This document shows, piece after piece, positions 11,993 to 62,395 of a stretch of 64,000 nucleotides of DNA. This DNA is from Isurus oxyrinchus (Eukaryota). Numbering within the stretch: position 1 is the first letter of the stretch; each line of letters begins with the position of its first letter. The notes under the pieces are model-generated. The model saw nothing but the letters and a program-made list of their open reading frames with translations, searched no databases and had not been told where the DNA came from. The position numbers were made by a program, and so were the translations under genes. The DNA lies in the NCBI GenBank assembly GCA_026770705.1, contig JANJGN010000018.1:40920001-40984000 (forward strand), written 5' to 3'.

Positions 11993-12688
11993 TATTTAAA
12001 AAAATTAAAAAGGAAAATAGAAGCAGTACTTCTGCTTCTCCCGGTCCCACAAAGGAAAGTTTAACACTTAATAGCCTTTTCAGTTTTCAACTTTTATGGA
12101 TGGGGCCATGGCAGCAGACTTCCTGCACAGAAGTCCAGTGGATTCCTATTGATGTAATAGCAATGAATAGCTTGTTTTAGGGTGAGTGCCTCATCTGCTG
12201 CCAAAATAGCAGCGTTAAGTTCCCTGCACTTAATTCACCATCTCCTCTTTAACCAACTCAAGTAAAAATTCGACCAGTTAAAATTCCCATTAGTGTTCAC
12301 AGGGTGGCCATAGGCTTTTTGAAAGTGTTAGAATACATTCCAATCTGCACAAATAGCCCAACTATGTAACATTACTACTGAGCTATCAAAGCATGATAGG
12401 AACTGTTGGATGGTGAAAGCTTTGCTCAGAACTAAAATCCAATTGCTGCCAGGGGTGTGCTAATTCTATTAGCTTTTCAATGATAATTGCCATTTGCTTT
12501 CATGTTGCACGGTAAGTTTTGACTGTTGGGCGCAGGTATGCACTAACCTATTTTGCTGTGGCTTCTGAGGACTTAAATGCTATTTTTGGCACATTGCACG
12601 AAAATCCCAAAGGACAAGACAGGGGTTTGACTGCTTAAAAGTATGCTGATAAAAAGCTCACTTGCTGGCCTAATAGGTAAGAATACCG

Positions 12689-12788
12689 AGACAAAAACAA
12701 AAATTGCTGGAAAAACTCGGCTGGTCTGACAGCATCTGTGGAGAGAAAGACAGAGTTAACGTTTCGACTCCAGATGACTCTTCTTCAG
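12689..12788 (-). mobile_element. Short Penelope-terminus (hammerhead-bearing) insertion, different subfamily, 14-bp TSD
   Basis: The minus strand reads CTGAAGA-A-GAGTC-ATCTG-GAGTC-GAAACGTTAACTCTG...GATGCTG...CCAGCAATTTTTG. Flanks are AGGTAAGAATACCG (12675-12688) and AGGTAAGAATACTG (12787-12800; the AG overlaps the element end). Confidence 0.8.
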
Positions 12789-15700
12789 GTAAGAATACTG
12801 CCTGGTGTACTGTTGTCACATAGACCAGTAATCCTTGTTTGTGCTAAATTAGCTAATAAAAAATAGGACAGTCCCCGGAATTGCTCTCAATTACCTCTGA
12901 CCAGGAGAAGAAAATCAGCCAGAGTTCCACTAATTGCTGCCCATTAATGGCTGTTGGAAAGTGTGCAAATATCTGGTGCAAACGGGATTGGGTTTAGCTG
13001 TGAGACCTTTCAAGGCAGGCTAGCTATTTTGGTTCGCACATTTACCTTGGGTTAGTAACTGCCCACAGAATCATAACTCAGCAGGTGTCAGTGCTTTCAG
13101 GTATAATTCGAAGAGCAAAACAACCAAAAGAGCATTCCAAAGAAGTCACAAGAACTTGAGGAAAACACAAAAAAAGGGCAATAATTTTAACTAACATTGC
13201 TCATTATGTTGGGTATGTTCTATGAATAGAACTTTTCATAGATGAGCCAAAATATAGCAAGATAATAAAATGTAATCACACTTAATCTGTTTAACAATTA
13301 CATCTAAATATTTGGGTGCAGATTTTTTTTTCTGCATCAAAGACCAGCGATCCTATTTCACCACTTTTCCATTTTAACTTTCCTTGTCACATGGATAATT
13401 TACCTTTCAAGGTGCACCAGCTTGTGGTCTTTTCCCAATTTTGTGAACAGTTTATAGTCAGCATCCAAGAATGGTATTGGTATTAGAGATTAGCCTTGTT
13501 TCAAGGGTATCGCTCTTATCTCAGAATCAGAGAAAGTGCTGCACTGATGGAGGCAATGACCTAGAAATTCAGGTTTCTGATTTAGGCATGCAACCTTTAG
13601 AGTGCAATTTGGCTGCTCTGTTTCCCTACATCACAATAGTGGCTGCACCTCAAAAATACTGCATTAGCTGTGTAGCATTTTGGGGAATCCTCAAGTATAG
13701 ATACCAGACCTCGTATCCAAGAGGCTCAGGACCGGACATGTAGCAGATATGGTGATTTTCCAGCTTTTGGGTCCTGGGGTGGAGCTGGTGTAGGATAACT
13801 TAAAGCCGGGTTGATTTCTCCATCGAGCTGGACCCAGCTGAGACAGGAAAAGGATGGGATGTGGGGCTGACCACACCAATTTCTGCCGTTAATCCCAGAC
13901 CCAAAGAGCAGGGGATCAGTGGACTGCCACCCGGATATAACAGACAGCAATGCCTGGTGGGGTTTATAGTTTCCAGTGCAGGACCCAGTCTGGATTTTGG
14001 GAGGCCGGATTACGGGTATGGTACCTGTGTGGAAAGGTGCAATAAAAGTTTTTTTCTTTACTTATTTTCTAATCAGCCAGGTGCTTGTAGGAATCGCTGA
14101 GTTTAAATGTAAAAATGGCATGAATGAGGGTTTCAGCAGTAGATGAGCTGAGGTAGGGGCGAAGTCGAGTGGTATTTTGGAGCTGGAAATAGTCAGTCTT
14201 AGTGATGGCATGAATATGAGGCTGGAAGCTCAACTTGGGATCAGATGTGACACCAAGGTTGCAAACAGATTGGCTTAATCTCTAACTATTGCCAGGGAGA
14301 GGGATGGAGTTGATAGCTAGGGAATGGAGTTGGAGAGGTGACCAAAAACAATGTCTTTCCAATATTCAATTGGATGAAATTTCTGCTCATCCAGTGCTTG
14401 ATGTTGGATAAACAATTCAATAGTTCAGCAACAGTGGGCACGCAAGCGGTGGGGTGGGGGGGCAGGTGGGGGGGTGGGTGCCAGTCTGAAAAATTCCCTT
14501 GGAGGCCTTTCCACTAGCTTCCTGCCTGCTCCCAGCCTGTTCAAAATTTTATTGGGGGTGGACGAGGCCTATGGCGACTGCTCACCCTTTCCCCAATTGA
14601 GGCCTTTAAGTGGCCACTTAATGGTTGTTTCCTACACAGCCTCAATTTTGTGCAGGCCTCGTGGGAACAGAGGCCTCCATCACCAGCCACCTTTTCCTGG
14701 TTGGGATAGCCCCCCCAAGGTCTTCCCCCTCCCCTGACCTCTCCATCAATAACCACCTGCCCATATCACCTCCCAGGCCCCTCCTCACAATCCCACTGCA
14801 ACACCCTTCAGCACTTACCTCCATCCTGGCTCTGGAACTTAGACTCATGGAACTGGGTGTAGTCTCAACAGTGGCCACTGCTCCCATTGGTGCTGCTGGG
14901 ACTATAGCCAATTAACACTCTTTGGAATGTTGAATTACTGAGGAGAAGCCAGCATCAGTGAGGATAGGTTCCCTGCCAACTCTGTAGGTGAAATCCTGCC
15001 TAGTGGAGGAGACTAGAGAGATGGTAATGAGGGGGAACTGGGTGTCATCAGCATACATGCAAACCTAACATTCTGTTTTTGGACTAATATAGCAAAATGT
15101 CCCAAGGTGCTTCACAGAAGCATTGTTAAACAAAAAACCAGTGTTAGATGGAAATGAGAAGTGATGACTAAATGCTTGGTCAAAGAGGTAGGTTTTAGGA
15201 TGTATGTTAGAGGAGGTAGAAGGAGATGCTTGAAAGAAACCATAAATTCTCTTCCCTATTCTGGCCAACCTTACGTACTCGTGACCACAAGGAAGTAAAG
15301 GATGCAATGGTGGTTTAAAGAAAGTTGCAGTGTGAATATCAGAATCAGAAAATAAAACTGTGTGAGCCAAACAAAATGAGGTCCAACAGCGAAAGTTTGC
15401 TGTTTACTTACTACTAAAATCAGCAACTGAGACTAACAGATAAGAAACGAGTGTCTAAAACTCACTGTGCCTTGCCTCTAAGGCTGCTCAGTTTAAACGC
15501 TGTCTGGTGTCCTTGTCGACAGCTCAGGACAGCAGGTTAACATCCCAAGCAGTCAGCTGGCACCTTCAAGGTGGTTAAGGGAACCTGAGTGATTTGAAAT
15601 GTTCGAAGGTTTCAACCAGGCAGTTAGTTAGCATCACCCTCAAAGATTTTTTCGTGCCAAGTTTCATGTTCTTTTAGAAGAAGGTGAAATTAGTCAACAA

Positions 15701-16509
15701 TAATAGTACAGAATAGGCTTATAATGAAATAGTAGCTAGTTGCACCCGATTTTCTTAATTCCAATGGAAAATTGGTTGCCATGTGAAATTAATTGTAAAT
15801 TAGATACCTGCCATTTTACACTATTGGCGGCAATCAGTTCAGAGTCCAGTGATCATTCTTACAGCTCTTTTCTGCACTGTCTCTGGAGCTTGATTTTTTT
15901 TCTCATGTGACCAGAACTGGAGACAGTATTCAACGTGTGTGGCGTGACCACATTTTGCTTTGTGGCTACAGAATGTGAAGTCTACCTATATCCCTGTACC
16001 TCTTTCGCCTTCATTTTCAGCTATTTTATCATGAGTTGTGAAGTAAATATAACATCCATTTGTCTTCATAAGTAAGCTACGCACTTTCCAGACCTCCATA
16101 AACTTTCATAGCTTTGGGTATTCTGTTGCTTTCAACCAACCTCAAGTCTTTCACAGCAACAAAGAATAGCTTTCTGGCTACATAAAATTTCCTAAATTAG
16201 GTCAGTTTCCAGACAAAGATCAGACATGTCCAGTTAACTGCATATATCTTTTTTTTAACACTTTTCTCATATGAGTACAGAGTGAAAATCAAAAATACTG
16301 TTGAAACAATGCCAATGATATTGTCATATTTTGCTAAACAGTAAAATACCCAAATGTTAATGGCTTGTTTGATTAATCCACAATTGTAAAAAGACGTGCA
16401 TACTTCCTGCTTGTTCTGCTGTGTACAGCTTATAAGGTCATCATTTTTAAACTTGTCTGACCTTTCAATGTGTAACAAGTAAGATATTAAGACACACCTT
16501 ACCATATCC

Positions 16510-17836
16510 CTGTGGCTGAACCTGCCTCATCAACTTCCCCCTTGTCCTCACTTAACTTCCCTCCTCCTCCACTGTGGGCGACAGGCCACTTAACTGTGTT
16601 CATCTCATTTTCTGTACTTTTGTTCCACCCCTTCCCAGCAATGTGATAGGGTTCCCTTTTTCCCAACTTCCACCCCACTAGCCTCCACATTTAAATGGAT
16701 CATCCTCTGCCATTCCTCCAATCAAATGTGATGCCACCTACAGACACAACGTCCCTTCTGCTTTCAGCATTCTGAAGCTAGGGACTGTTCTCTGCATGGC
16801 ACTCTTCAATCACCCCCAGCATCCCCTCCCCATTCCACAGCACCTTCACATGCAAGCTCAGGAGATGCAACACCCCGGCCTGAAATCTCTGTTTCCACCA
16901 GCCAGGGCCCCAAACACCCCTTCCGAGTGAAACAGCAATTTACTTGCGCTTCTTTCAATTTACTATACTATATTTATTCCTCTTAATGCTGTACCGTGTA
17001 CAGTGGGGAGGTCAAATGCAGATTGGATGATTGTTGTTCAGAACACCTTCACTTCTCGTTAGTCACTTCTCATTTTAATTCTACATCCTCATCCCACTCT
17101 GACCTCTGTGTTCTCAGCCCCCTACATTGTTCTATTGGAGGTCAATGTTAGCTCGAGAAACAGCACCTCATCTTTCAACAATGAGCACAACCATTTTAGA
17201 TCATAGCTTCGGCTCCTATTTTTTATTTTTTGGAATGTAGTTACTGGTACTGATTCTGTTTTTGGCATTTTCAGCCCACTGGCTGCATCTTTTTGTTTTT
17301 TTACTTGTCCCATTACCCACTCTCTTTTGTCCTCTTCGCTTTTCACTATCATTTTTTTGTCATTTATGATGTTGTAAGATCCCACCTCTGAGACCATGTA
17401 TTAAGTTCGTTGCGACTGGCCAAGGAACGGTTGCAGAGACAAAGATACATCTGAGCAGTAACTGGTTTATTGGATGAACTTTACCACGTATAGATATACA
17501 CACTACAGGTGTTACTCTGTCTAAACCATGAGCTTTCTCCTTTCTGACTCTTTGCCATGTGTCTCTCTCTTACATCATCATGCAGGTGGTATGGTTTTTC
17601 CAGTTCCACACATTAACTCTTTCGACCATGAACACCGTAATACTACAATTTAATTTCTCCTGCCTGCACTTTCTGCTCTTTCCCCCCACCACCCTCTTGC
17701 TGCACTTGCTTAAAAATTTACTCATCTCTAACTTTTTCCAGCTCAGACAAAATGGCATTGGCCTGAAATGTTAAGTCTGTTTCTTCTTCCACAGATGCTG
17801 CCTGACTTGTTGAGTATTTCCAGCATTTTCTGTTTT
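16510..17836 (+). mobile_element. Older degraded Penelope-like element 3' part (GIY-YIG region and terminus)
   Basis: Recognisable homology to 61200-62340 (cccaaacacccctt..gtgaaacagcaatttacttgc; cagcacctcatctt; cagatgctgcctgacttgttgagtatttccagcattttctgtttt), with many indels. Confidence 0.8.
17367..17647 (-). mobile_element. Probable solo LTR (281 bp) nested in the old Penelope copy
   Basis: Begins TG and ends CA, flanked by the 5-bp direct repeat ATTTA (17362-17366 and 17648-17652). AATAAA is present on the minus strand near 17466. Confidence 0.65.
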
Positions 17837-18378
17837 AACCCCTGTCACTTAGTAACTGTTCTCTTTTTTCCATACTGATAGAAATTCCTGAAAAATATGG
17901 GGGAGTATTAATCCCCAAAAATGTGTGGATTTGGTTTGGGTGGGAGGTTAAAAAGTTAAAAATCTGAAACAGGAACCCAATGTATCAAGCATTGTCCTCA
18001 GTGCCATCTTTAGCACGCCAATTGTTTGTTCAGTCATGTTTCTATGATGGCATGGCCCTCATTGCAGGCCAGCTCTGCACTGTGCCCAAGTTTCTATCAG
18101 GAGTCATGCCCAAAGGAAATAGTCCTTGTCACCCAATAGCCATCTGTAGCTTGGCATTGGCATTTTGATTGGAATGAAGACGACACTGAGGACTGACACA
18201 GGATGAAGGAGTCATGATCGCTGCCAGGATGTGCTGCTAACTAGCGGTGAGTTGAGGAGTGAAATGCAATTCAACTGTTAAAGATGCCAGACTGGTGATG
18301 GGTGATTACTCAAGACAATATGGATGCAGTCTGTGTCACCTTGCACACTGGGGAAGTCTGCCATATGGATGACACCGA

Positions 18379-19558
18379 GGGTGGAATTTTTGTGCCCATT
18401 GACGGAGGGCATGCTTGCCGTAAGCGGACAATATGGTGAGGCCAAAAATTGGTTTCACAATGTCGTGAGACCATTTGCAATTGTCCACTCTGCCCGTCAA
18501 TGATGGGCTATATTTCCCACCGTCAGACATTGGGAACTTCATTGTAATACATCTGTATATCATTATAAGCCCAGCTCACTGGAACCATCGCCTAATGCAG
18601 GATCATCTGAAAAGCCAATGTGTTTCACAACTGTGCATAAGCGACTTGCACCTGATGAGCTGCACTTCACTTGGGAGTTTGAGGTTTGTTTGCCTATCTT
18701 GCTTCGGGTAGCACTCACGGTCATCAGCGCCAGGCTTTGCACACAGTACCACATCACTTTTAGGGGGCCTCATGGGCAGGTATCTACCTACCAGAGCAGC
18801 CATTAAGCAGGGTCATTTTATAATGGCTGCAAGGCTATGGCTTGCTTGGGGAAGGGGGAAAAGTGACTTCATTCAGGAGAAGAGGCTGCAGGGTGAGGGC
18901 TATACCGAGGAAAGGGGTATCCCAGGGTATGTGTGAGGGCACAAGTTGACCTGTGCAATGGGCCTCAAGATGGTGAGGGCTGAGGAGGCAATGTCTCTTG
19001 AGCTGACAGTAAGTGAGATGCCAGTGAATGTGTGTATGAATTTGGAGTGATAAGATGGTTGCCTTACCCTGGTGGCACAGATGAGATCATTCATCCTCCA
19101 TCTGCATTGGATGACCAAACTCTTGTGTACAGCATTTACAATGATCACCACTACATTGCCTATGAAGCCAGAGTGGTGAGATTGTTGCCCCTCCTGTGGC
19201 CAGAGCTGGGGTAGAGAACTTCACGACAGGCCTCCAGGGTGTTCAAAAGGTGTTCCGGGGACGTGTCACTGAATCAGGGGACTGCATTCTCCTTACATTT
19301 TGGGGCTATGCCTTCTGTGCAGCAGTGCTGGGCTGGAAGCAGAGAGGTGTGTGCGCGGCTGCACTTTAAGTATAGTACTTGGTGTGAGGAAGCAGTGAGG
19401 TGATGGTGTGGCGGGCAAATGAGAGCTTGCCCACCATTGAAATGGCATGTTTCCCTGGATTGCATGATTAATGAGGCAGGATTGGGATGATACGGCGTGA
19501 AAACATTCTTTTTCCTGCCTGCTACCGTACTTAGTGCAAATCTGGGACAATCCATCCC
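18379..19558 (-). mobile_element. Harbinger-type non-autonomous element carrying a decayed Myb/SANT exon
   Basis: Starts GGGTGGAATTTT and ends ATCCATCCC. Homologous in reverse to 58182-59373. Confidence 0.62.
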
Positions 19559-21005
19559 TAGTGTTCTCTTGTCCTGCTTTGCTGTGTCCATGAGGAATGA
19601 GATGTTAAATGTTTCTCCTAGCTTTGAGAGCCTTGCTGACCTCCTTAATTGATGCAGCAGTGGGCTGTGAACCGAGATATGTTGCTGATAGCTGCTGCAG
19701 CCTGAAAGGAGGGCATGGCGCATAAGTTACAGGCTAGGGTGACCTTGATAGTTAGATGCCCAAGTCCTGGCCTGAGGCTCGAGTTGTGCCTACAACAAGT
19801 GACATAGCTCAGGGACATCTTCCTTTTAGATGTGAAGCTGCCTCAGATGTTTGTTAGTGAAGCTTATGTAGGGGAAGTGCTTGCTGAATATACATTGTGG
19901 ATAAAGTCTCCTGCACAGTATCCTTCTCCTCTACATTCTTATTGCTGCTGCTCATACTCCAGTCACTTTTCTTTGCTGTTCCCCATCCAGACTACCCATG
20001 GTTGTAGTCAATTTGTATCCCAATTAAGGCATCCGAAAACAATGTAACACCAGCAAAATCATCTTTGCAGCTGTCAAGCCTAACTTTCCTGGATTGGAAA
20101 ACAGGGCAAAAAACAGGCAGATGTCAACCAGCAGCCTAAAATATGAAACCAGCAACTAACCTGCAAACACTACATGGTCCCTTGAAATAGCACTGATGTT
20201 GAGAATTCTAGGGCTAGAGTTACTATTATGTTGACCTGTTCAAATGCAATCTTTGCTTTTGAAACTAATCGGTGTTTAATTTGTCACTTTAAGTTTAAGT
20301 TATGCTTTTTCTTCCTTATTTTATATCTTGTTCAGGTTATCAGATGATAACTTGATGATACAGATATTGATCATGCTTCTTTGTGCATGCTGCCTGAAGC
20401 TTTTTCTCGGCATTATGTTCATGATTAAGAACCACAAACACTTCTGTCAAACACTGCTGTCTGAATAACGTGTTGTGTGATCGAATTTCTGTAAAGCTGA
20501 AGTACTCAAAACAGCAGCTGTAGGTTACATTAACTCCACCGCAACGAGCAACTGCACAATTTCAGTTAGAATTTAAATTCACAAAGGAAGAGGTTTTCTG
20601 CATAGGTTAAAACACAATACAAAAAAACATACAGAGGACATAATGGTCTGATCTCTCAGTGGGTGGAAAGAGGTTACTACGGATGTTAATTGTACATTTT
20701 CTTTCTCGTTAAGTTATTTTCATCATGGAGTATTTAACAGATTAGAATATAGAAATGTCCATCAATTGTGTGCGGATGCTTTTTAGGTCACTATTGAATA
20801 TATAGGAGCCAGAGGTCCATCTGAGCTGGAATTGGGTTTGGGCTTTATCAGAAGAAATATTTGCAGCCCCCTTTACTGCACTTCAAATGTATGGCTAGTG
20901 ACCTGCCCTGGTTTCCATTTATTCTTACAGTTCTTAAGAGAGCATGAAGGGAACATCATGAAGCACTTTTTAAAAAATGTGCTCCCATTGTTTAATTAAA
21001 CATTT

Positions 21006-21994
21006 GGGCTGAAAATTGGATATGGCCCTCTCAGGCGCATGGGGATTGTGATGCACAATTACCCTTATCGGATCAAAACTGTGCTGCCTGCTCATCTCCA
21101 TGTTTGTGGTGTGCAGTCCAATGCTAAATGAATCAGCAGGACGCCCACGTTTGAGCAATTCTAGCATGCGTGCAGGCTGGCTTTAAGAGATGTAGGTTAG
21201 CTTTAAAACCAGCCTGTACCTGTTAAAGAGGCGGCACATTTTGGTTGCAGCAGGCTTTGGAATGGGATCTGGGAGTGTTTCTCAAAAGGAAGTGTGAATA
21301 ATGGAACAGCAGGCCAGGGAGGAAGCTCCCAAGTCCCGTGCTCTCCAACATACTGGAGGCTCAGTGAAGGAGACAGAAATGAGGAAGGAAGGCATCTTTC
21401 TGCGGGAGCCAGAGATCCACGAGACATTTACTTTGAAGGGAATGTGAGCAGATAGCCACAGAGGTTATTGCAAGGAGTCTGGTCTTCAGGGCTAATGCAA
21501 CAGGCATTGTTGAACCATCTGGAATGAAAGTATGTTCCTACTTTATGCATCTTCTCAAATACCACTATGCTCTCATCCCGTAATCTAGTATAAATTACAA
21601 GCTGCAGATGATGTGATCACTCACCTCTTCTTTTCAAAACCACATCATCTGAAAACCTTAAGCCAATGCCTTTAAATCATGCTCAGGTGGTGTAAGCCTT
21701 GTGCAGTTGAACAGATGTTCACGTGTGTGTGTTTAAGGGAGCATGTTAACAGGACCTGAGGCTCAAAATGGCAGGTCAGGCACAAAATTAGCAATAGACT
21801 CTGACTGACATCACAATCTGCCCACTCCACATGCCTTTGGTGCAGGCACAAGATGGCAGCACTATCACCTTTCCTAAGGCCCCACCCAGGCTCCTATAGC
21901 ACTGAAACCAGGAAGGCTTCAGGGCTGTAACTGGCAGTCTAAGTTGTGTTGAACGGATTTGACAATAGGTGCTGGCATTGCAGCATTTCAGCCT
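21006..21994. mobile_element. Old Harbinger-like element remnant
   Basis: Termini GGGCTGAAAA / TTTCAGCCT, with weak Myb-exon-like sequence at ~21300-21530. Confidence 0.35.
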
Positions 21995-23045
21995 GGATTA
22001 TAGAACTCAGGTACTCTATCATAGTCATTCTGTAAACCCAGCACATTCTATCATAATATAATTAGGCACATTTCATGTAAGAGTGGCTGATCCGAGAGTC
22101 TCTATCGGAATGATGTTCCATTGAGAATGTTCCCTTAATGTGCCCTTCTCACTTGCCTTCCTGCAGTTTATGTAATGCCATACTCTCTAAAATCAGAGAC
22201 AGAAATCAAATACCCTCTCATTTTTACTTTATTTTTGTAAGATACAACTTTCAGCATTTTTCTTAGAAAACACAAAGAACGTTTGTAAATTTTAAATTAA
22301 TAGCCGTACAAAATGGAAAGCTTTCCATTAAAAGTTAACTTGCCAGAGTAAGGTGGTTTATCTATATCTATGTATAATATAGATAAAATAATCTAATTTT
22401 ACATAGTCACATGAAGCCAGACAAAAATAGCAATATCAGGAGATTATTTAATAGCATGTAATCCCGCTGTGGCAGTAATTATTTTGTTCTCCCTGTTCCT
22501 TCTGACAACATTGACTTTTGTAGGCTTATGAGGATCAATTTTAAATACTGGCAAAAGGCCTCAGCCAATTAGAGGCACAGGTCTCATTTGTGTTCAGTTG
22601 ATGAGCTGCAGGTACTAAATGGATAATGCCCTGTTAAAACTCGCCAGTTCTGAGAGGCAGGAAATTGATCAGCTCCTGCATTGTCAGTCAGAGGCTGGTG
22701 GAGGGGTGGGGGAAGAGACCTTGAATGGGCTGGCAGCAGCCCAGATTTTTTTTTGTGTGAACCCAGGAAACCTCACAAAAATGGAGATTAAACACTTCCT
22801 GGTTAGTTTGGCGAGCAACTTTCAGTAATCCCCTTCAAGACCATTAGTAGGCCACCTACAAAAAGGAGCATGTGTTGTTCATGGGCCTCACATTTGCACC
22901 TCAAATTTTTCAAATCAGGGTCTTTCTTGCTTGTGGAGGCACAGTAGTGGGACTGCTACTGCTCCATTCCCATCGGGTAGGCCAAGTTAAAATCTGGCCC
23001 CACTGCGACCATCCAATACCTGATTTAGCTATTTTTATAGCTATT

Positions 23046-23424
23046 GGGGGAGGCAGTGGCATAGTGGTAATGTCACTGGACTAGTAATTCAGGGGCCCAG
23101 GTTAATACTCTGGGGATGTGGGTTCAAGTCCCACAGGAATTTGGACCTAATTAATAAATTCAGGTATATAAAGCTAGTCTCAGTAATGGTGACCCTGAAA
23201 CTATCATTGTTTGTCATAAAAGCCCATCTGGTTCACCAATGCCCTTTAGGGAAGGAAATCTGCCTTCCTTACCTGTTCTGGCCACATGACTCCAGATCCA
23301 CAGCAAAATGGTTGACTCTTAACTGTCCTCTGAAATGGCAAGCCACTCAGCTCAAGGGCAATTAGGGATGGGCAACAAATGCTGGCCTTGCCAGTGCCAC
23401 CCACATCTCAAAAGATTTTTAAAA
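23046..23424 (+). mobile_element. tRNA-derived SINE (HE1-like)
   Basis: A box TGGCATAGTGG (23057-23067) and B box GGTTCAAGTCCC (23121-23132). The 3' tail CTCAAGGGCAATTAGGGATGGGCAACAAATGCTGGCC is shared with the HER1-like LINE. Confidence 0.8.
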
Positions 23425-25698
23425 ATCTCTATGTATGAATCTGGACAGCAAGTGTAAGAGGCCTATTTGACCACAGGCATTATACCCATGTCCAATTCTG
23501 TTCTTACCAATTGTCTACAGTGTCCTCTAGTAGGAATAATGAGAAACTGCAGGTGGTTCCAGTGCTAGCTTGGAAAGAGGCGGACATAAAAAAAAATCGA
23601 TGGTGGTAGTGATCTTCAATGTCAATAATTATACAGATTGCTGTAGGTGTCATCCAGCAGATGGTTTATCTTTGAAACTGTCTCTCTGCCAACCTGCAGC
23701 CTGAACAGACAGTGGACCTCAGTCTGTGCCTTGTCCTCATATGATTGGCGACATGGGGGTTTGGAAAGTTGAACTCTAATGCCAGCTGATCTCCTTGGCA
23801 TACATTTGTTCATCTAAGAATATTTTGTGGCTAAAATAATACATTTGGAGTGCTTTAAAAACAATTCCCCATCATTAATTTTACATTGATATGGCAACTG
23901 GTGGAGGATTCTGTAACCTTGCTGCCTTGAGCTGCTGTAAATGTTTGTTTCAAAGCGCTTTTCCTATTCCCTTCTTTAGCTTGTTTCACGGTATTCTTGG
24001 AACTGGTTCAACTTTAATTAAATTTCTGGTGATTCGGTACACAATATTTGACTGTACACAAATTTTCCCTACTTGTAAAAATGCCCAAAAAAGTAAAAAC
24101 ACTAAAATGCTATTGAAAACAATGACAATAAAAAAAAACTTCTTCAAAGGACCCTTGGATATATCCAATCAAAATCTTAATATAAAAATCAAAGTTATCA
24201 AAGTTGTCTGAATAGCCCATCCTTTTCACCACATAGACCTAAAATAAGATTTATAAAAAATGCCTACTTCCTCATGCATGGCCAGATAAATGCCATCATA
24301 GCACATAACCATTCTGACTCTAGCTGCACAAATGTACACACTGCCACACATAATACTGTCTCAGTAAAGTCTATCTCTGATCCCAGAAATTTTGCCACAC
24401 ATCTGGACTACAATTCCCATGAATTACTGAGCTGCCTGGTCCTACCACAACATGTGTAAGGCCTTTAGCACAATGCATATAGAAAATAATCCTGTCTCCA
24501 GTCATGTCCTGATCCGATCTTTCAGGAACAAAAAATTAAACTTATCTCTCTTCTATCTGTCAAAACAATCATCTTTCTGTCTGAGATCACAGGATACGTA
24601 CAAACCATGAAAGCTTTTTCATCCATTTCCAATAACCCAGCTGGAACCCCACAGCCATCCCTTGCCCCAACAATTAACTAGCTTTGCTCTATTCAAGATT
24701 TCATTCCAAATGCTGCACATTCTTTGCAAGAGTTTCCTGTGTTCAATTCCAAATTTATCATTCACCCCAGTTTGAATTCATTTCCCTTCTCCCCAGTGTC
24801 TGGGCTTGTTGTTAAGCTTTAATCTAACATGGTGCTCTCATTGTATCTTTATAATACATTTTACTGTCTTATATACTTCAATGGGGTCCCTTTCAGCCAC
24901 CTCCTTCAAGGCTGAATGACAAAAGTTAATCCAGCCTCACACTATGGTTCAGCTTTGTGGCTCTTCTCTGTACCATCTCAAGGGTTTGAACGATTGTATC
25001 CCAGTGACAAAACTGACCACTGTACAAACGGTGTGGTCTGACCATACACTTTGTAGATACTGAATAACATCCACCAACTTTTTCTCTGCTGATTTAGCAA
25101 TTAAGTTAAGCATTTTTGACAAGCCCAACCCTGGGCAAAAATTCAATTATAATACATTGCTCTCCAAGTGTTAGATTTCTGTTAGATTTTTAGAATCTAA
25201 AACTCTTTGATTATTTTGTTATTTTTGACTCCCTGGTGCTCTGGATTTGGAGCAATGGCTGCAAGGATTTCAATAATGTGGAAACTATTGAAGGATTGAA
25301 AAGCATTGTACGTTTTAGGTTTGAATTGAGGAACTGAAAAGTACAAGAAGGAAGTTCACAAATATTAAGCATTGGCAATAAAGAAGCAAAACAATTGGGC
25401 TGTTTGAACCAGGAGAGAAACTGAGCTTTTCAACATATTGTGATAAGACTGAATAACGTATTTACAAATTTCTTGTTAGGCAAGGTTTACCAATGTTAAT
25501 TTTTTAAAAAGTTATAATGTGCAAGATGAATGGATGCCCTCAAATTGCATTTATGTTTTAACTTTTTGTTTGGCTGGGATACAGTGTAAATATTTTCTTA
25601 ACCACAAGTGATATTTTGCTGCTATTTATGACAGTTCCTATAGCAACAATAGAGTTACAAAAATAAGGAAGTACAAAATTCTATATTACATTGTCTTC

Positions 25699-26699: not shown

Positions 26700-26865
26700 C
26701 GGTCTGTCCCTTACTGCCCATCTAAGCACCATAAAAATTTTCTCACCAAGATATCGTCATTGCTTTTCTCCCTCAGCCTCTGCACCAAAAAACTTCTCAT
26801 CTTTTATGATTTCAATCTTCACCTCAAGTCATCAGGTTCTCTGTCCTCTGAGTTTGCTGTCCAGG
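26700..26865 (+). mobile_element. L2 LINE endonuclease fragment
   Basis: PSKHHKNFLTKISSLL..LLIFYDFNLH, the APE GDFN region. Confidence 0.55.
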
Positions 26866-50799: not shown

Positions 50800-51478
50800 A
50801 TTAGAGAACTGGGGTTGTTCTCCTTAGATCAGCAAAGATTAAAGAGAGATATTTGATGGAAGCATTCAAAACCCTAAATGGGGTTTTGATAGACTAAATT
50901 AGGAGAAACTACTTTCAGTGGCAGAAGGTCCAGGGACCAGAGGACAGAAATTTCAGGTAATTGGCAAAAGAACCAGAGGTGATGTGAAGAAACTTTTTTT
51001 TAAAAAAAAACAGAACAAGCAGTTATGATCTGGAATTAACTGCTTGAAAGGTGGTGGAAGCAGATTCAATAATAACTAACTATCTAAAGGGAATTGGAGA
51101 AATACTTGATAAGAAAAAAAATTGCAGGGCTCTAGGAAAAGAGCAGGGGTTGGGCTTAATTGGAAAACTCTTTGAAAGAAAAAACAAAAACAGAAATACC
51201 TGGAAAAACTCAGCAGGTCTGGCAGCATCGGCGGAGAAGAGTACAGTTGACATTTCGAGTCCTCATGACCCTTCAACAGAACTAAGGGTCATGAAGTCTC
51301 GAAACATCAACTGTACTCTTCTCCGCCGATGCTGCCAGACCTGCTGAGTTTTTCCAGGTGTTTCTGTTTCTGTTTTTGTTTTGGATTTCCAGCATTCGCA
51401 GTTTTTTTGTTTTTAACTCTTTGAAAGAGCCTGGAGCCAAATAGCTGCCTTCTGTATTGTGTCATTTTATGATTCTAT
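50800..51478 (+). mobile_element. CR1 LINE 3' end, host of the 51180-51414 palindrome
   Basis: gaactggggttgttctccttag, accagaggacag, gtggtggaagcagattcaata, ending tatgattctat. Confidence 0.75.
51180..51414. mobile_element. Non-autonomous Penelope terminal fold-back (palindromic) insertion with 14-bp TSD
   Basis: About 93-bp inverted arms around the 10-nt loop CAACAGAACT. Tail at 51383-51414. AACTCTTTGAAAGA at both 51166-51179 and 51415-51428. Confidence 0.9.
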
Positions 51479-53249: not shown

Positions 53250-56200
53250 GACCTCCATACCCCCTCATCATCTCCCGCTATGAGAAAGAGGTCTTGGAGC
53301 TTGAGAGGTGCCATGCACCTTAGTTGAGTGGTTGCGGTGAGGCTGGAGTGTCAGACGAAGATAAGAGTGCAGTGCACTGAGGCGAAAAGTTTGGCTTGTG
53401 CACCCATATTAGTGTAGTCTCTTCATCGATGAGACCCCTGAACCTGGAGTCCCCAGTGATCATTGAAAGACGAGGGCACCATGATGCAAATCTCCATTGT
53501 CTCACCAAGGTGCCTGGCATGCGCAGTGACAAGTGTGACGACTTTAACTAATGACTTCCTTCTTCTCCCTTTTAGGTTCACCTGCAGGCATTTGCCCTCC
53601 AGACCCTGAAGGGTCAACCCTGACACCGGAGGACCACCATGCTCCCCATGCACCTGCATCAAACCCACTCTCTGAAGCAGGCACCAGCACAGATACCAGC
53701 ACCTTGGTGGGCATTAGTTTGGGGCAAGTATCTCAGTGCACATTGGTGAGGGCACTTCATACTCACTTGAGGTGCAGACGGAGGCAGAAAGCGCCCAGGC
53801 GCTAGCAGTTGGAGGACTGCTGGGGATCAGGACTGAAGGCAGATGATGAGCCTCTGGAGTCGTTCATTAGGCAGCGGGATGTGCAGGAGGATCTGGCAGA
53901 GATCCAAGAGGGTATGTGTGCCATGTTCTCCATTGTGGAGGAGTCCCTGCTGAGCGCAAACTGGGCATTGACCCTCATGGCTGAGCAGAGACTGTCATGG
54001 AGAGGCAGCTCCAGGAACAGAATCAGGGGTTCCTGGGGTTGTGCTCGGACCTGCAAGCCCTCACACAGGCACTGATCTCAACTGGTCAGTGTCCGTGTAT
54101 GAGATAGATGGGGCACCTAGTATCCCAGCTAGGTGCCCATCCATCAATGGTGAGCAGGGAGGTTCAGAGCGACCTCATGTTGGAGCACAAACTGCTTATC
54201 GTCTCTGGATGTTCCTCTCAGGGTGCTCAGGATGATTGGGCAGCAGCTCCTCCACCCCTCTGCCAGTGACAGTGGCATCAGATGAGGCTGCGATGACTGG
54301 GCAGATGCCAGCTTTGGCACCGGCCTCTCCCTCCCAGGCAGGGCCAGCATGGGCTCCACTGGCCAGAGGATGACTGCCAAGGTCATCATGACCAACAGGA
54401 CAACAGAGTCAGCAGGCTATCTCCAATGCCAGCAAGGGGGGGAGCACCTACGTGTAGCACGCGTAAACATAAGTTTAAAGCACTTTAAGCACCAGAGGGA
54501 CTGGTCACATGTGAATTTTTGTTCCCCCATTGTTTTATTTCCATGGTGTAACTACCAACACCTTTTTTTTCTGTTCAAAATGACGTGAGTTCCAACATAA
54601 AAGTATATTTGTTTTTGTTATCGGCCTGAGTATGCTTCATTTATTTTGTAGGTGCAGTGTAGGCCAATATGTAATGTGAACATGAGCGGCTTGAACCTTT
54701 ATTACACAGGCACTGAGTGTATCCTGGGGACCAAGGAGAGGGTCATTTCTGTGATCCAAGATGAAGGCGGCAGCCCTGGTATGAGGTGATAGTTCTTATT
54801 GGACAACCTGGATGAGGGAGCTAAAAACAAAAAACTGCGGATGCTGGAAATCCAAAACAAAAACAGAATTACCTGGAAAAACTCAGCAGGTCTGGCAGCA
54901 TCGTTCTGTCGAAGGGTCATGAGGACTCAAAACGTCAACTCTTTTCTTCTCCGCCGATGCTGCCAGACCTGCTGAGTTTTTTCTGGATGAAGGAGCGTTG
55001 GATCAAGGCATCCCTCCCCCTCTGGAGGTTACAGAAGTCTGCCTCCACGTTCTCAGCTTTCTCCTTACCATGCTCCTCTTCTGACTCACTACTGGGTTCA
55101 TCAAGTATGGCCTGTGGAGCTGCCTCAAGATCCTCTTCCTCCAGTAGGTACCCCCTTGCCAGTGCCAGATTGTGGAGAGCACAGCATGTAACCACTATCA
55201 GTGATGCCTGCCCTGGGCGGGGCATATTGTGTTGCTCCCCCCGAACAGTCCAGGCATCGGAAGTGCATCTTGAGAAGACCGATGGTTCTCTCTATTACAG
55301 CCCTTGTGGAGGTGTGGCTCCTGTTGTACTGCTGTTTCGCCTCTATTCTTGGGTGGTGGAGAGGCATCATGAGCCACCTTTTCAACGGATAGCCTTCATC
55401 ACCCATAAGCCATCCATCCAGTCAGGCTGGAGCACTGAACAGCCTCGGCACCTGGGAGTGAGCATCTGAGGATGTATGTATCATGGGAACAGGACAGACT
55501 TGCAGAATCTGCATCCTGTGGTCACACACTATCTGGATTGTTCATGGAATGGAATCCCTTCCTGTTGACGAAGGCACTCGGCTCACCCACTGGCACCTTG
55601 ATGGCCACATGTGTGCACTCCATTGCATGGATGCGGAGAACTCAGCAATCGCTGCAAAGCCTTTGGCTTGCCCAGACTGGCTGGCCTCATCTGTACGGAA
55701 CTGAAGGAAAGTCAATACCTGCCTGAACAGAGCATCAGTCGCCAGCTTGACACAACTATGGACAGCTGCTTGGGAGACTCCACACAAATCCCCTACTGAG
55801 CCCTGGAAAGAGCTGGAGGCATAGAAGTTGAGGGCCACTGTGACCTTCAGAGCCACTGGCATGGGATGTCCACCCATACAGTCGGGAACTGATCTCAGGT
55901 CCAATCATATGACAAATGGAGCTCACTGTCTCCCTTGAGAGACGGAGCCTCCTTCAGCATTGCACCTCAGACATATCGAGGCAGTTGCACCACTGCCTGC
56001 AAACCCTGGCAGTGGGATAGTGGCGTCTTCTGCGGTCCCTTCTGCCTTGGGCTTCCTGTTGGCCCTGTGCCCCTTGTGCCTGCACCTCTCCTCCCACAGG
56101 TCGCTCTCCTGGAAGCTGCATAGGGACTACCTGGCCTCCTCTCCTTTCTGCCCCTCTCTTCCTCCTCAGAGGAGGTTCCTCCAGCAGAGACCACAGTCCT

Positions 56201-58137: not shown

Positions 58138-58181
58138 GTCAACTTTGGAGCCAGATATCCCTCACCTTGGGTATGGAATTA

Positions 58182-59373
58182 CAGTGTAAATCTGGGATGA
58201 TTCCGCCCTAATTGTGTGGTAGTAGGCATAAAGAAGAAGTTTTACCCACCGGCTGCAATCGTGGGTTTTTGCGCCATATCGTGCACTTCCTGCCTCATTA
58301 ATTATGCAGCCACGCAAACATGCCATCTCGCTGGCAGATGGCCTCTGAATCTCCACCATTTCCTCACTCTGGGTGCCATATCTAAACTGCAGCCACGCAC
58401 ACTGTTCTCAATGCTTACAGCCCAGGACTGCTCCAGTGAAGACATGGCCCTTAAAGCTAAGAAGAGTTCAGTTGCTGGAATACCTTTTGGAGACCGACCG
58501 TGATGTTCTCCACCCCCATTCTGGCTGCAGGAGGTCCAGCAATCTCACCACTCCGGCTTGGGAGGCGGTGGCAGTGGTAGTCAGTGCCAATGCTGCAAAG
58601 AAGGTATTGGCCATCCAGCGCAGAAAGAATCTGAATGATTTCATCTGGGCCGCCACAGTAAGGCAATCATCTCATCATTCTAAACTCACACTCAAGGCCA
58701 GCACACATTTACTGGCATCTCTGTCAGTGTCAGCTCAAGGGATATCAACACTCACTCTCTCACACACCCCCTCACATCACCATCTGGCTGCATCTCCTCT
58801 GCCCTCACCATCTTGAGAAAGCTTACACAGAACAAAGTGTGCCCCCACAAACACCCTGGGATACCCCTTCGCCCTCGCCCTGCTGCCTCTTCCCTTGCCC
58901 AAGGCCACTTCATCGCCTTCCCAAGCAAGCCTTAGCCCTGCAGCCTTAAGGCTGGTCTGGTAGGTAAAGACATGCCCATGAGCCCCCCTAAACTTGATGT
59001 GGCCTGTGAAGTCTGGCGCTGATGACTGTGAGTGCTGACCAAAGCAATGTTGGCAAACAAACCTCAAAAGTCCCGAGAGAAGTGCAACTCGCCAGGTGCA
59101 TATCGCTTATGGACAGTTGTGAAGCACATCGACGTGCCCGGATGATTGGGAGGAATGATTCCGGTGAGCAGGGTTTATAATGAGATGCTAAAGTATTGAA
59201 ATTGGATTCCCGACGTGTGGTAGCAGGAAATGCTGCCCGAGAGTGACAGGCGGAGCATACAATCGCAAACTGTTTTCACAATGGTGAAAAACTGATTTTT
59301 TGACCTTCTCACCATATTATCCGCTTATGCCACCAAACAAGCCCGCCAGCAATGGGAACAGAAAATTCCACCC
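58182..59373 (+). mobile_element. Same Harbinger-type family, with a Myb/SANT exon remnant
   Basis: Encodes LLEYLLETDRDVLHP...AWEAVAVVVSAN..AIQRRKNLNDF, followed by a gtaagg donor. Ends AAAATTCCACCC. Confidence 0.68.
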
Positions 59374-59712
59374 ACATTGTTTTCCATTGTGTAAACAGCA
59401 GAACGATTGACTATGTCTGTACAGTCCTGTTTAAACCAAGGAATGGAATAAACCAAAGGTAAAGAGGTGCTAAGCACTGAGTTACTCAGTGGAATGCTAT
59501 CTGTGCCTGTGATAGTGTGATCTGAGTCATCATAAAAGAGGGTGACATCAGAGAGTGGGCACTGCAGTCAGGAGGAGGGGGACAGAGACTGGTCATCTCC
59601 AGATCCGGGCCTCCAATCAAAACTGGTAACGACTCCCTGATACTGGAGAATTGCCTGTAACATTCTCTTGACTTGAAGTTTGATCCATCCTGGACAATAT
59701 AGCTGGGTTTCT

Positions 59713-62381
59713 AAAACAAAAACAGAATTACCTGGAAAAACTCAGCAGGTCTGGCAGCATCGGCGGAGAAGAAAAGAGTTGACGTTTCGAGTCCTCATGA
59801 CCCTTCGACAGAACTTGATTTCGAGTCCAGGAAAGAGTTGAAATATAAGCTGGTTTAAGGTGTGTGTGTGGTGGGGGGAGGAGAGAGAGAGAGAGACAGA
59901 GGTGCTTGTGTAGACAAACAAGCAGTGATAGAAGCAGATCATCAAAAGATGTCAGTAACAATGGTACAAAAGAACACATAGGTGTTAAAGTTAAAGTTGG
60001 TGATATTATCTAAACGAATGTGCTAATTAAGAATGGATGGTAGGGCACTCAAGGTACAGCTCTAGTGGGGGTGGGGGGAGCATAAAAGATTTTAAAATAT
60101 TTAAAAATAATGGAAATAGGTGGGAAAAGAAAAATCTATAAAATTTATAGGGAAAAAAAAAGAAAAGAAAAAGGGGGAAAAAAGGGGGGAAACAGAAAGG
60201 GGGTGGGGATGGGGGAGGGAGCTCACGACCTAAAGTTATTGAATTCAATATTCAGACCGGAAGGCTGTAAGGTGCCTAGTCGGAAGATGAGGTGTTGTTC
60301 CTCCAGTTTGCGTTGGGCTTCACTGGAACAATGCAGTAAGCCAAGGACAGACATGTGGGCAAGAGAGCAGGGTGGAGTGTTAAAATGGCAAGCCACAGGG
60401 AGGTTTGGGTCATTCTTGCGGACAGACCGCAGGTGTTCTGCAAAGCGGTCGCCCAGTTTACGTTTGGTCTCTCCAATGTAGAGGAGACCACATTGGGAGC
60501 AACGAATGCAGTAGACTAAGTTGGGGGAAATGCTTCTTCCTCGAACAGAGGCCCGAACAATCCCCATCCACCACTACTCTCCTCCGTCTGGCTGAACTTG
60601 TTCTCACGTTGAACAATTTCTCCTTCAACTCCTCTCACTTTCTCCAAATAAAAGGTGTGGCTATGGGTACCCGCATGGGCCCCAGCTATGCCTGTCTCTT
60701 TATGGGATATGTGGAACATTCCTTGTTGCAGTCCTACCCCGGCCCCCTTCCACAACTTTTTCTCCGGTACATCGATGATTACTTCGGTGCTGCTTCATGC
60801 TCTCGTCGGGACTTGGAAAAATTTATTAATTTTGCTTCCAATCTCCACCCCTCCATCATTTTCACGTGGTCCATCTCTGACACTTCCCTTCCCTTCCTTG
60901 ACCTCTCTGTCTCAATCTCTGGTGATAGACTGTCCACCAATATCCACTACAAACCCACCGACTCCCACAGCTACCTCGACTACAGCTCCTCACACCCCGC
61001 TTCCTGTAAGGACTCCATCCCATTCTCCCAGTTCCTTCGCCTTCGTCGCATCTGTTCCGATGATGCTACCTTCAAAAACGGTTCCTCTGACATGTCCTCC
61101 TTCTTCCTTAACCGAGGTTTTCCACCCACGGTCGTTGACAGGGCCCTCAACCGTGTCCGGCCCATCTCCCACGCATCCGCCCTCACGCCTTCTCCTCCCT
61201 CCCAGAAACATGATAGGGTCCCCCTTGTCCTCACTTATCACCCCACCAGCCTCCGCATTCAAAGGATCATCCTCCGCCATTTCCGCCAACTCCAGCATGA
61301 TGCCACCACCAAACACATCTTCCCTTCACCCCCCTTATCGGCATTCCGTAGGGATCGCTCCCTCCGGGACACCCTGGTCCACTCCTCCATCACCCCCTAC
61401 TCCTCAACCCCCTCCTATGGCACCACCCCATGCCCACGCAAAAGATGTAACACCTGCCCCTTCACTTCCTCTCTCCTCACCGTCCAAGGGCCCAAACACT
61501 CCTTTCAAGTGAAGCAGCATTTCACTTGCATTTCCCCCAACTTAGTCTACTGCATTCGTTGCTCCCAATGTGGTCTCCTCTACATTGGAGAGACCAAACG
61601 TAAACTGGGCGACCGCTTTGCAGAACACCTGCGGTCTGTCCGCAAGAATGACCCAAACCTCCCTGTGGCTTGCCATTTTAACACTCCACCCTGCTCTCTT
61701 GCCCACATGTCTGTCCTTGGCTTACTGCATTGTTCCAGTGAAGCCCAACGCAAACTGGAGGAACAACACCTCATCTTCCGACTAGGCACCTTACAGCCTT
61801 CCGGTCTGAATATTGAATTCAATAACTTTAGGTCGTGAGCTCCCTCCCCCATCCCCACCCCCTTTCTGTTTCCCCCCTTTTTTCCCCCTTTTTCTTTTCT
61901 TTTTTTTTCCCTATAAATTTTATAGATTTTTCTTTTCCCACCTATTTCCATTATTTTTAAATATTTTAAAATCTTTTATGCTCCCCCCACCCCCACTAGA
62001 GCTGTACCTTGAGTGCCCTACCATCCATTCTTAATTAGCACATTCGTTTAGATAATATCATCAACTTTAACTTTAACACCTATGTGTTCTTTTGTACCAT
62101 TGTTACTGACATCTTTTGATGATCTGCTTCTATCACTGCTTGTTTGTCTACACAAGCACCTCTGTCTCTCTCTCTCTCTCCTCCCCCCCCCACACACACG
62201 CCTTAAACCAGCTTATATTTCAACTCTTTCCTGGACTCGAAATCAAGTTCTGTCGAAGGGTCATGAGGACTCGAAACGTCAACTCTTTTCTTCTCCGCCG
62301 ATGCTGCCAGACCTGCTGAGTTTTTCCAGGTAATTCTGTTTTTGTTTTGGATTTCCAGCATCCGCAGTTTTCTTTGTTTTC
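59713..62381 (+). mobile_element. Young Penelope-like element, 5'-truncated, with an inverted copy of its 3' end (fold-back) and 14-bp TSD
   Basis: Open RT-C-half + GIY-YIG frame from 60534 to 61838 (QIKGVAMG, RYIDD, VYCIRC..YIGET, R..EH, GLN). 59713-60533 is the reverse complement of 61528-62348. ATAGCTGGGTTTCT is present at both 59699-59712 and 62382-62395. Confidence 0.95.
62246..62284 (+). ncRNA. Minimal type-I hammerhead-ribozyme-like motif in the Penelope terminal repeat (mirror copy 59777-59815 on the minus strand)
   Basis: AGUU-CUGUCGA-A-GGGUC-AUGAG-GACUC-GAA-ACGU-C-AACU. Stem I is AGUU/AACU, stem II is GGGUC/GACUC, and a palindromic ACGU replaces stem III. Minimal hammerheads are an established feature of PLE termini; the core here has U at position 6. 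Confidence 0.65.
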
Positions 62382-62395
62382 ATAGCTGGGTTTCT

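What the first reader, a model, noticed from the sequence alone, without database searches (positions are those of the whole stretch)
12675..62395. Four independent Penelope-type insertions all have a 14-bp target-site duplication
Seen: 14-bp direct repeats flank 59713-62381 (ATAGCTGGGTTTCT, exact), 51180-51414 (AACTCTTTGAAAGA, exact), 54822-54982 (CTGGATGAG/AGGAGC, 1 mismatch) and 12689-12786 (AGGTAAGAATACC/TG, 1 CpG-type mismatch). Insert sizes range from about 0.1 to 2.7 kb, span two subfamilies, and show no shared target sequence. Established: TPRT elements, including PLEs, usually leave variable-length TSDs. Inference: this GIY-YIG/RT machine makes a fixed 14-nt staggered cut without sequence specificity, for example as a ruler-like dimer, which would be a distinctive mechanism and potentially useful for gene writing.
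Basis: partly seen in the sequence, partly recalled or inferred. Interest (0 to 1): 0.8.

Follow-up and report, generated by a model that had tools for sequence, protein, structure and literature searches.

The report
Shark Penelope-like insertions with 14-bp duplications
Four separate insertions of a very abundant shark Penelope-like retrotransposon are each flanked by a 14-base duplication of the target, which suggests the element cuts the two DNA strands a nearly fixed distance apart, though four cases cannot show that the distance never varies.

Summary
All four 14-bp flanking repeats are at the stated coordinates: two are exact and two have one mismatch. They are not chance: 11 of 20,000 random placements gave a repeat of 13 bp or more.

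The inserts are Penelope-like element (PLE) copies, with RT followed by a C-terminal GIY-YIG domain. Three have outward-facing element 3' ends on both sides and a ~33-nt tail on one side only, which is known PLE anatomy.

A contig from a sister organism crosses the 2.7-kb site with one 14-mer and no insert. That is a true empty site.

These four are every PLE insert in the window whose two ends can both be read. With n=4, the share of 14-bp TSDs is only bounded at 0.47 or more.

Unchecked notes of this scan from other windows of the same genome report 13, 14, 15 and 14-16 bp. The scan had therefore seen this before, and "fixed" is probably a tight mode.

The claim of no target preference is doubtful. 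All 8 half-sites fit RRN|N14|NYY (post hoc, p about 0.01).

The dimer ruler is untested. I found no statement of a 14-bp PLE TSD in the paper library that I could search.

The parts
12675..12688 (.). Left TSD copy of insertion 1 (AGGTAAGAATACCG)
   Evidence: 13/14 match to 12787-12800. The difference is C versus T at a CpG.
12689..12786 (-). Insertion 1: a single 98-bp 5'-truncated PLE 3' end of an older subfamily, with no tail
   Evidence: 80.9% identity over 94 nt to 62255-62345; alignment and nhmmer hit, E 7.7e-26.
12787..12800 (.). Right TSD copy of insertion 1
51166..51179 (.). Left TSD copy of insertion 2 (AACTCTTTGAAAGA)
   Evidence: 14/14.
51180..51283 (-). Insertion 2, left arm: element 3' end facing outward, no tail
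   Evidence: 94.2% over 103 nt. alignment; arms 88/94 identical.
51284..51414 (+). Insertion 2, right arm: element 3' end facing outward, with a 32-nt tail at 51383-51414
51415..51428 (.). Right TSD copy of insertion 2
54808..54821 (.). Left TSD copy of insertion 3 (CTGGATGAGGGAGC)
   Evidence: 13/14.
54822..54902 (-). Insertion 3, left arm: the 3'-most ~82 nt, including the tail (54822-54853)
   Evidence: 97.6% over 82 nt..
54903..54982 (+). Insertion 3, right arm. It runs from the 5' edge of the hammerhead-like unit to an internal T run and has no tail. It overlaps the left arm as an inverted repeat for only 27 nt.
   Evidence: 98.7% over 79 nt. (54877-54903 versus 54955-54981)..
54983..54996 (.). 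Right TSD copy of insertion 3
59699..59712 (.). Left TSD copy of insertion 4 (ATAGCTGGGTTTCT)
   Evidence: 14/14; the empty site in organism B keeps one copy.
59713..60533 (-). Insertion 4, left arm: an 821-bp inverted copy of the element's 3' part, with no tail
   Evidence: 818/821 identical to 61528-62348.
60534..62381 (+). Insertion 4, body: a 5'-truncated PLE. It has an open 434-aa RT(C-terminal part)-GIY-YIG frame at 60534-61835 and a 33-nt tail at 62349-62381.
   Evidence: GIY-YIG E 3.6e-4, RVT_1 E 5e-3, both under Pfam's cut-off. (52.9% identity to aa 330-756 of the 759-aa P0014)..
62382..62395 (.). Right TSD copy of insertion 4

Best explanation
The four repeats are real target-site duplications. 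They were made by a very abundant shark Penelope-like retrotransposon (RT plus C-terminal GIY-YIG nuclease).

The element nicks the two target strands about 14 nt apart. In most events the 3' ends of both strands prime reverse transcription near the 3' end of the element's RNA. The two cDNAs are then joined head to head. This leaves element 3' ends facing outward on both sides, inside one 14-bp duplication.

The stagger is tightly constrained, with a mode of 14 bp and a likely spread of 13-16 bp. It is probably set by the geometry of the element's own protein, not by host repair. The same weak sequence preference at both nicks (two pyrimidines just outside the duplication on each strand) suggests that the same nuclease makes both cuts.

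Shown here: the TSDs, their length in 4 of 4 readable cases, the arm anatomy, one empty site, and the abundance.

Inferred: the polarity of the stagger (3' overhangs), priming at both ends, and the protein ruler.
For: -: four 14-bp repeats. Random placements reach 13 bp or more in 11 of 20,000.
- a contig of organism B (X15, record 11) joins 59698 directly to 62382. The insert plus one 14-mer (2683 bp) is absent there. The source organism's contig X1 record 2 covers the filled junction.
- an RT-then-GIY-YIG frame. The nearest named proteins are elasmobranch (68% Rhincodon, 66% Hypanus).
- in 3 of 3 fold-backs the ~33-nt tail is on one arm only, and the arms stop at different T runs.
- the arms of insertion 3 overlap by only 27 nt, so they are two separate cDNAs and not a copy of one another.
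- there are no other inserts in the window that can be read at both ends, so 4 of 4 are 14 bp.
- 8 of 8 half-sites have pyrimidines at +2 and +3. Such a column pair turns up in 1.3% of 50,000 random sets.
- raw-read depth is about 1.8 on unique flanks against 10,000-24,000 on the element, so there are on the order of 10^4 copies at 90% identity or more. Many joints such as 59815 to 62246 show that mini fold-backs are a common form.
- Geometry (inference from B-DNA, about 10.5 bp per turn): a 3' stagger of 14 nt puts both cut phosphates on one face of the helix.
Against: - There are only four sites, in a window that may have been noticed because of the coincidence.
- Notes from other windows (unchecked) report 13, 15 and 14-16 bp. 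A 13-bp TSD cannot come from a chance extension of a 14-nt stagger.
- The polarity of the stagger cannot be read from sequence. A 5' stagger that is filled in before priming gives the same product.
- The pyrimidine pattern was found after looking, and n=8.
- Pfam scores for RT and GIY-YIG are below the curated cut-offs.
- No protein experiment or structure bears on the ruler idea.
Confidence: 0.72

Rival explanations
1. The stagger is strictly invariant at 14 nt. It is made by a symmetric dimer that acts as a ruler and has no sequence preference.
For: - 4 of 4 readable inserts are 14 bp.
- If the stagger is fixed at 14, the chance that none of four TSDs is lengthened by a chance match at an edge is (9/16)^4 = 0.10, which is not unlikely.
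- Observed lengths of 15-16 elsewhere could be such chance extensions.
- The symmetric flanks RRN|N14|NYY fit a two-fold symmetric complex.
Against: - Unchecked notes report 13-bp TSDs in the same genome, one of them from a follow-up agent.
- The pyrimidine pattern argues against "no specificity".
- Nothing tests dimerisation.
- The best-studied GIY-YIG ruler, I-TevI, is a monomer (PMC2988022, passages read).
Confidence: 0.15
2. Coincidence. The family's TSD lengths vary broadly, as in other target-primed elements, and this window shows four equal ones by luck and by selection among many windows.
For: - The scan holds notes on 1610 windows of this genome, so a striking window can be picked up by selection.
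- Other notes give 13-16 bp.
- PLE TSDs in Adineta vaga are 8-10 bp or absent.
Against: - All values noted anywhere in this genome lie within 13-16 bp, which is already narrow.
- Under a flat 13-16 distribution, four observed 14s have a probability of about 0.002 (my arithmetic, allowing for chance extension).
- The four sites are all the readable ones in the window, not a chosen subset.
Confidence: 0.1
3. The fold-backs arise from one cDNA that snaps back on itself (self-priming), as was proposed for rotifer PLEs, and not from priming at both nicks. In that case the TSD reflects an ordinary first and second nick.
For: - PMC3846280 (discussion passage read) interprets inverted PLE structures by self-priming.
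- The arms of insertions 2 and 4 are near-perfect inverted copies (88/94 and 818/821).
Against: - The two arms differ at their outer ends: the tail is on one side only in 3 of 3 fold-backs.
- In insertion 3 the arms cover largely different parts of the element, with only a 27-nt overlap.
- That paper itself notes that self-priming on a sense template would give tail-to-tail repeats, not the head-to-head repeats seen here.
Confidence: 0.1
4. The short fold-backs are MITE-like DNA transposons moved by a transposase. That would explain both the terminal inverted repeats and a fixed TSD length.
For: Inverted ends together with a constant TSD length are the usual signature of cut-and-paste transposons.
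Against: - The outer ends are not constant: they come with or without the tail and stop at different T runs.
- Insertion 1 has a single arm and no inverted repeat, yet it has the same 14-bp TSD.
- The arms are the 3' end of an RT/GIY-YIG element.
- The inner junctions differ in every copy.
- I know of no transposase family with 14-bp TSDs (recalled; no call).
Confidence: 0.02

Closest known systems
[quoted passage not shown]
   Same: - RT followed by a C-terminal GIY-YIG nuclease.
- Frequent 5' truncation.
- An inverted 5'-truncated copy at the 5' side.
- A 30-40-bp tail at only one end.
- Short TSDs.

Sources: PMC8557442 abstract and passages; PMC3846280 passages; PMC2377424 passage.
   Different: - The TSDs quoted for Adineta vaga are 8, 9 and 10 bp or absent. 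Here 4 of 4 are 14 bp.
- No pseudo-LTR tandem is visible in these truncated copies.
- Rfam finds no hammerhead here, even at E up to 10.
- The passages I read give no TSD length rule for vertebrate PLEs.
L1/Alu target-primed reverse transcription and L1 twin priming
   Same: Staggered nicks, a cDNA primed on the target's 3' hydroxyl, TSDs with a preferred length, and use of the second nick as a second primer (recalled knowledge; no call).
   Different: - L1 uses an AP-type nuclease, and its TSDs are recalled as spread over roughly 7-20 bp.
- In twin priming the second primer anneals inside the same RNA, so only one outer end is the element's 3' end. Here both outer ends are 3' ends.
I-TevI, a GIY-YIG homing endonuclease with a protein ruler
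   Same: A GIY-YIG catalytic domain is held at a set distance by a linker with a zinc finger, and it has a weak local cleavage-sequence preference (PMC2988022, passages read). The shark frame has a cysteine cluster (C-x4-C-x2-C) about 40 residues before the GIY-YIG motif (seen directly).
   Different: I-TevI is a site-specific monomer that makes a double-strand break with a 2-nt stagger, 23 and 25 nt from its binding site. It has no RT, and it does not make a 14-nt stagger.
R1 rDNA-specific non-LTR elements
   Same: A precise 14-bp TSD (recalled; no call).
   Different: R1 is site-specific in 28S rDNA and uses an AP-type nuclease. The shark inserts lie at four unrelated sites.

Membership tests
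Penelope-like elements, canonical EN+ type | A single frame with RT followed by a C-terminal GIY-YIG nuclease | tested here: met
   - RVT_1 at residues 24-87 and GIY-YIG at residues 337-371 of the 434-aa frame. Both are below Pfam's cut-off (E 5e-3 and 3.6e-4).
- The YIDD and YIG motifs are visible.
- 52.9% identity over 431 aa to a 759-aa homologue with the same domain order.
- 977 homologues at E 1e-20 or better.
Penelope-like elements, canonical EN+ type | An inverted 5'-truncated copy next to the element, giving inverted-repeat structures | tested here: met
   821-bp arms, 818/821 identical. Two short fold-backs.
Penelope-like elements, canonical EN+ type | A 30-40-bp tail at one end only | tested here: met
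   a 32-33-nt tail on one arm in 3 of 3 fold-backs; separate piles of loose ends at 62349 (no tail) and at 62371/62380 (tail).
Penelope-like elements, canonical EN+ type | Pseudo-LTRs formed by partial tandem copies | tested here: not met
   No direct tandem of the 3' region appears in any window copy. All the copies here are 5'-truncated, so the feature may simply be missing from these copies.
Penelope-like elements, canonical EN+ type | A hammerhead ribozyme motif in the terminal repeat | tested here: inconclusive
   Rfam gave 0 matches at gathering score over the whole window. It gave no hammerhead at E up to 10 on 62150-62420. By eye, 62246-62284 can be drawn as a hammerhead-like fold with a non-canonical core, as note s1-864045 says. 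I did not test this.
Elements with a fixed-length TSD | The same TSD length at all or nearly all independent insertions | tested here: inconclusive
   4 of 4 in the window, so the lower bound on the share at 14 bp is 0.47. Unchecked notes say 13-16 bp.

The most novel reading that the evidence does not exclude
The shark PLE protein makes two symmetry-related nicks at RRN|N14|NYY sites, exactly one helical turn plus the minor-groove offset apart. That is a 14-nt 3' stagger with both cuts on one face of the DNA. It hands both 3' ends to reverse transcriptase at once. The stagger and the double-ended insertions would then be two read-outs of one rigid two-site complex, either a dimer or an RT-anchored nuclease tethered by its cysteine-rich linker. 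This would be the first geometric description of second-strand cleavage in Penelope-like elements.
Probability: 0.3. Interest if true: 0.7.

Novelty: new member of a known kind. Interest (0 to 1): 0.45.

Why it matters
How Penelope-like elements integrate is an open question. Their students call the transposition cycle undefined and ask for an in vitro system (PMC8557442, discussion passages read). In particular, how the second strand is cut is not known.

A family with about 10^4 young copies, a sister species that supplies empty sites, and a TSD that clusters at 14 bp would let the nick geometry and the nick-site preference be read from genomes alone.

Any use for gene writing is speculation at this stage.

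Tried and rejected
1. A fifth data point. The old copy at 16536-17848 has no flanking repeat. Searches gave only hits inside its coding part, so it is undetermined. The copy at 15 to about 1996 loses its 3' end at the window start.

2. More copies from elsewhere.
- Exact-pattern scans of metagenome, prokaryote-genome and viral contigs with a 28-nt stretch of the arm gave 0 hits.
- A 30-letter degenerate form gave 0 hits in metagenomes.

3. Counting TSD lengths in the scan's notes by number. The index drops numbers, so searches returned the same list. Those three look-ups were wasted.

4. The tail as a duplicate of the preceding 35 nt. This is not significant (308 of 2000 shuffles score as well), so I dropped it.

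5. Hammerhead by Rfam: nothing.

6. Microhomology between the primer and the RNA.
- The blast alignment of the long arms runs 11 nt into the left TSD, and 7 of those 11 match by my own count on the letters (extent of the alignment).
- The other arms give 5-6 of 11-14 by eye.
- There are too few cases, so I make no claim.

7. The DNA-transposon reading: rejected (see rivals).

8. Papers.
- Searches found no statement of a 14-bp or fixed TSD for PLEs.
- Pyatkov et al. 2004 (PNAS) is not held. What I say of it is recalled.
- Figure 2 of PMC3846280 and the supplements of PMC8557442 and PMC8969392 may list more TSD lengths. Figures are not held and I did not open any supplements.
Full report
**Observation.**
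- Two pairs are perfect 14-mers: 59699-59712 with 62382-62395, and 51166-51179 with 51415-51428.
- Two pairs differ at one base: 54808-54821 with 54983-54996 (G versus A), and 12675-12688 with 12787-12800 (C versus T at a CpG).
- The neighbouring bases differ on both sides of every pair, so 14 is the maximal length in each case.
- In 20,000 random placements of inserts of the same sizes, with three bases of slack at each end, a flanking repeat of 13 bp or more with at most one mismatch appeared 11 times.

The repeats are therefore not chance.

**What the inserts are.** The 2669-bp insert carries an open 434-residue frame (60534-61835).
- The frame has a reverse-transcriptase core and, at its C-terminus, a GIY-YIG motif. 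Pfam finds both, but below its curated cut-offs.
- It aligns at 52.9% identity to residues 330-756 of a 759-residue homologue with the same domain order. This copy therefore lacks about 330 N-terminal residues and is not autonomous.
- A search of the large protein collection gave 977 homologues at E 1e-20 or better. The closest named ones come from elasmobranchs: whale shark 68%, a stingray 66%.

To the left of this frame lies an 821-bp inverted copy of the element's own 3' part, 818 of 821 identical.

The two short inserts at 51180 and 54822 are fold-backs made only of the terminal ~100-130 nt. The 98-bp insert at 12689 is a single terminal fragment of an older subfamily, 81% identical.

In 3 of 3 fold-backs a 32-33-nt tail is present on one arm only. 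The other arm stops at an internal run of T. Inverted 5'-truncated copies and a 30-40-bp tail at one end are described features of Penelope-like elements (PMC8557442 and PMC3846280, passages read).

Rfam finds no hammerhead, neither at gathering score over the window nor at E up to 10 on the terminal 271 nt.

**Independent proof of one TSD, and abundance.** I laid four public runs on 58300-62900.
- A 926-nt contig of a closely related organism (run X15, organism B, record 11) runs from 59176 to 59698 and continues without a break at 62382-62789. That organism therefore lacks the 2669-bp insert and has a single 14-mer, which is a true empty site.
- A contig of the source organism (X1, record 2) crosses the filled left junction with no differences.
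- Raw reads of the source species (X20) cover the unique flanks about 1.8-fold and the element 10,000- to 24,000-fold. The family therefore has on the order of 10^4 copies at 90% identity or more. This is a rough ratio, and reads that fit both arms may count twice.
- Loose ends pile up at 62349 (the no-tail end), at 62371 and 62380 (the tail end) and at 62246 (a favoured 5' end).
- Joints such as 59815 to 62246 occur in many contigs. Mini fold-backs are therefore a common form of this family.

**How far "all are 14" reaches.** blastn with the element, nhmmer with a profile of the arms and a scan for inverted repeats find no further PLE inserts in the window, apart from two:
- a longer copy cut by the window start (15 to about 1996);
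- an old 68%-identical fragment (16536-17848) with no detectable TSD.

Four of four bounds the share of 14-bp TSDs at 0.47 or more (95%). A chance match lengthens a true TSD at either edge with probability 1/4. A fixed 14-nt stagger would therefore give four unextended TSDs with probability 0.10, while a flat 13-16 distribution would give four observed 14s with probability about 0.002. These are my own arithmetic.

Notes of this scan from other windows of the same genome, which are unchecked AI notes, give 13, 14, 13-14, 15, 14, 14-16, about 14 and 13 bp. The scan had thus met the same thing before on other DNA. If those notes are right, the length is a tight mode and not a constant.

**Target preference.** I aligned the eight half-sites at the edges of the TSD. 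Both positions +2 and +3 outside the TSD are pyrimidines in 8 of 8, which gives a two-fold symmetric target RRN|N14|NYY.
- Random sets of four sites from the window show an adjacent pair of unanimous same-class columns, somewhere in 30 columns, in 1.3% of 50,000 sets.
- The left flanks of the two youngest inserts share an 8-nt stretch at 7 of 8 positions.
- This was found after looking and rests on eight half-sites. It is a lead, but it speaks against "no sequence specificity".

**Mechanism (inferred).** The element's 3' end abuts the TSD on both sides. Each arm must therefore have been started on a target 3' hydroxyl that already contained the TSD sequence.
- The simplest geometry is two nicks that leave 14-nt 3' overhangs, each extended on RNA, with the two cDNAs then joined head to head.
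- In insertion 3 the arms cover mostly different parts of the element, with only a 27-nt overlap. In all three fold-backs the outer ends differ. This fits two separate cDNAs better than one cDNA that snapped back.
- A 5' stagger filled in before priming cannot be excluded from sequence.
- In B-DNA a 3' stagger of about 3.5 + 10.5 nt places both cut phosphates on one face of the helix. This would suit a rigid two-site complex.
- A GIY-YIG precedent for a protein ruler exists in I-TevI, which is a monomer (PMC2988022, passages read). A tethered single nuclease is therefore as good a model as a dimer.

**Comparison with print.** In the passages I read:
- PLE TSDs are 8, 9 and 10 bp or absent in Adineta vaga.
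- They are called short, or are not quantified, elsewhere.
- Six full-text searches found no 14-bp or fixed-length TSD reported for PLEs.
- The 2004 paper on the Penelope nuclease is not held. I recall that it reports nicking of one strand with some site preference.
- Figures and supplements that I could not see may hold further TSD lengths.

**Verdict.** The elements are ordinary members of a known class with known anatomy. The regular 14-bp TSD is real in this window and is a modestly new, testable property of this family. "Fixed", "non-specific" and "dimer" are not shown.

Noticed in passing
window 15-1996 (minus strand): A longer copy of the same family, 92.4% identical over 1628 nt. Its RT frame reaches about 120 residues further towards the N-terminus than the 2.7-kb copy. 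Its 3' end lies before the window start, so no TSD can be read.
   Followed up: partly
window 16536-17848 (plus strand): An old PLE fragment of a different subfamily: 68% DNA identity and 37% protein identity over 199 aa. It has a recognisable 3' terminal unit, but no flanking repeat was found.
   Followed up: yes
window 62246 and joints 59815>62246: In raw reads, 3657 loose ends lie just before 62246, the 5' edge of the hammerhead-like unit. Many contigs join the inverted arm directly to 62246. A discrete ~100-136-nt terminal unit therefore seems to be a favoured insert, often as a perfect fold-back.
   Followed up: partly
window 58300-59377: The DNA upstream of the 2.7-kb insert is itself repetitive. 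Raw-read depth there is about 25-260, against about 2 on the unique flank at 59378-59685. Another repeat family therefore lies there (table 2). I did not identify it.
   Followed up: no
window 59702-59712 versus 62349-62359: The alignment of the long inverted arms runs 11 nt into the left TSD, with 7 of 11 matches to the start of the tail by my own count (extent). This may be microhomology between the target primer and the RNA at the place where the tail-less arm begins. It is a single case.
   Followed up: partly
window 60532-60534: In raw reads, 5338 loose ends just before 60533 agree at 0.95 on one sequence. That sequence matches the upstream RT part seen in the copy at the window start. 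This confirms that the 2.7-kb copy is 5'-truncated at 60534 while most family members continue.
   Followed up: yes
window 62385: About 570 raw reads, roughly 2% of the depth of the element's end, run 4 nt past the end into the TSD and show T instead of G there. A minority of copies therefore share the first three bases after the tail (table 3). The meaning is unknown.
   Followed up: no
window 61445-61470 (protein residues ~304-313 of the 434-aa frame): A cysteine cluster (C-x4-C-x2-C) lies about 40 residues before the GIY-YIG motif. It is seen directly in the translation. It may correspond to the zinc-finger-like linker recalled for PLE nucleases. Not tested.
   Followed up: no
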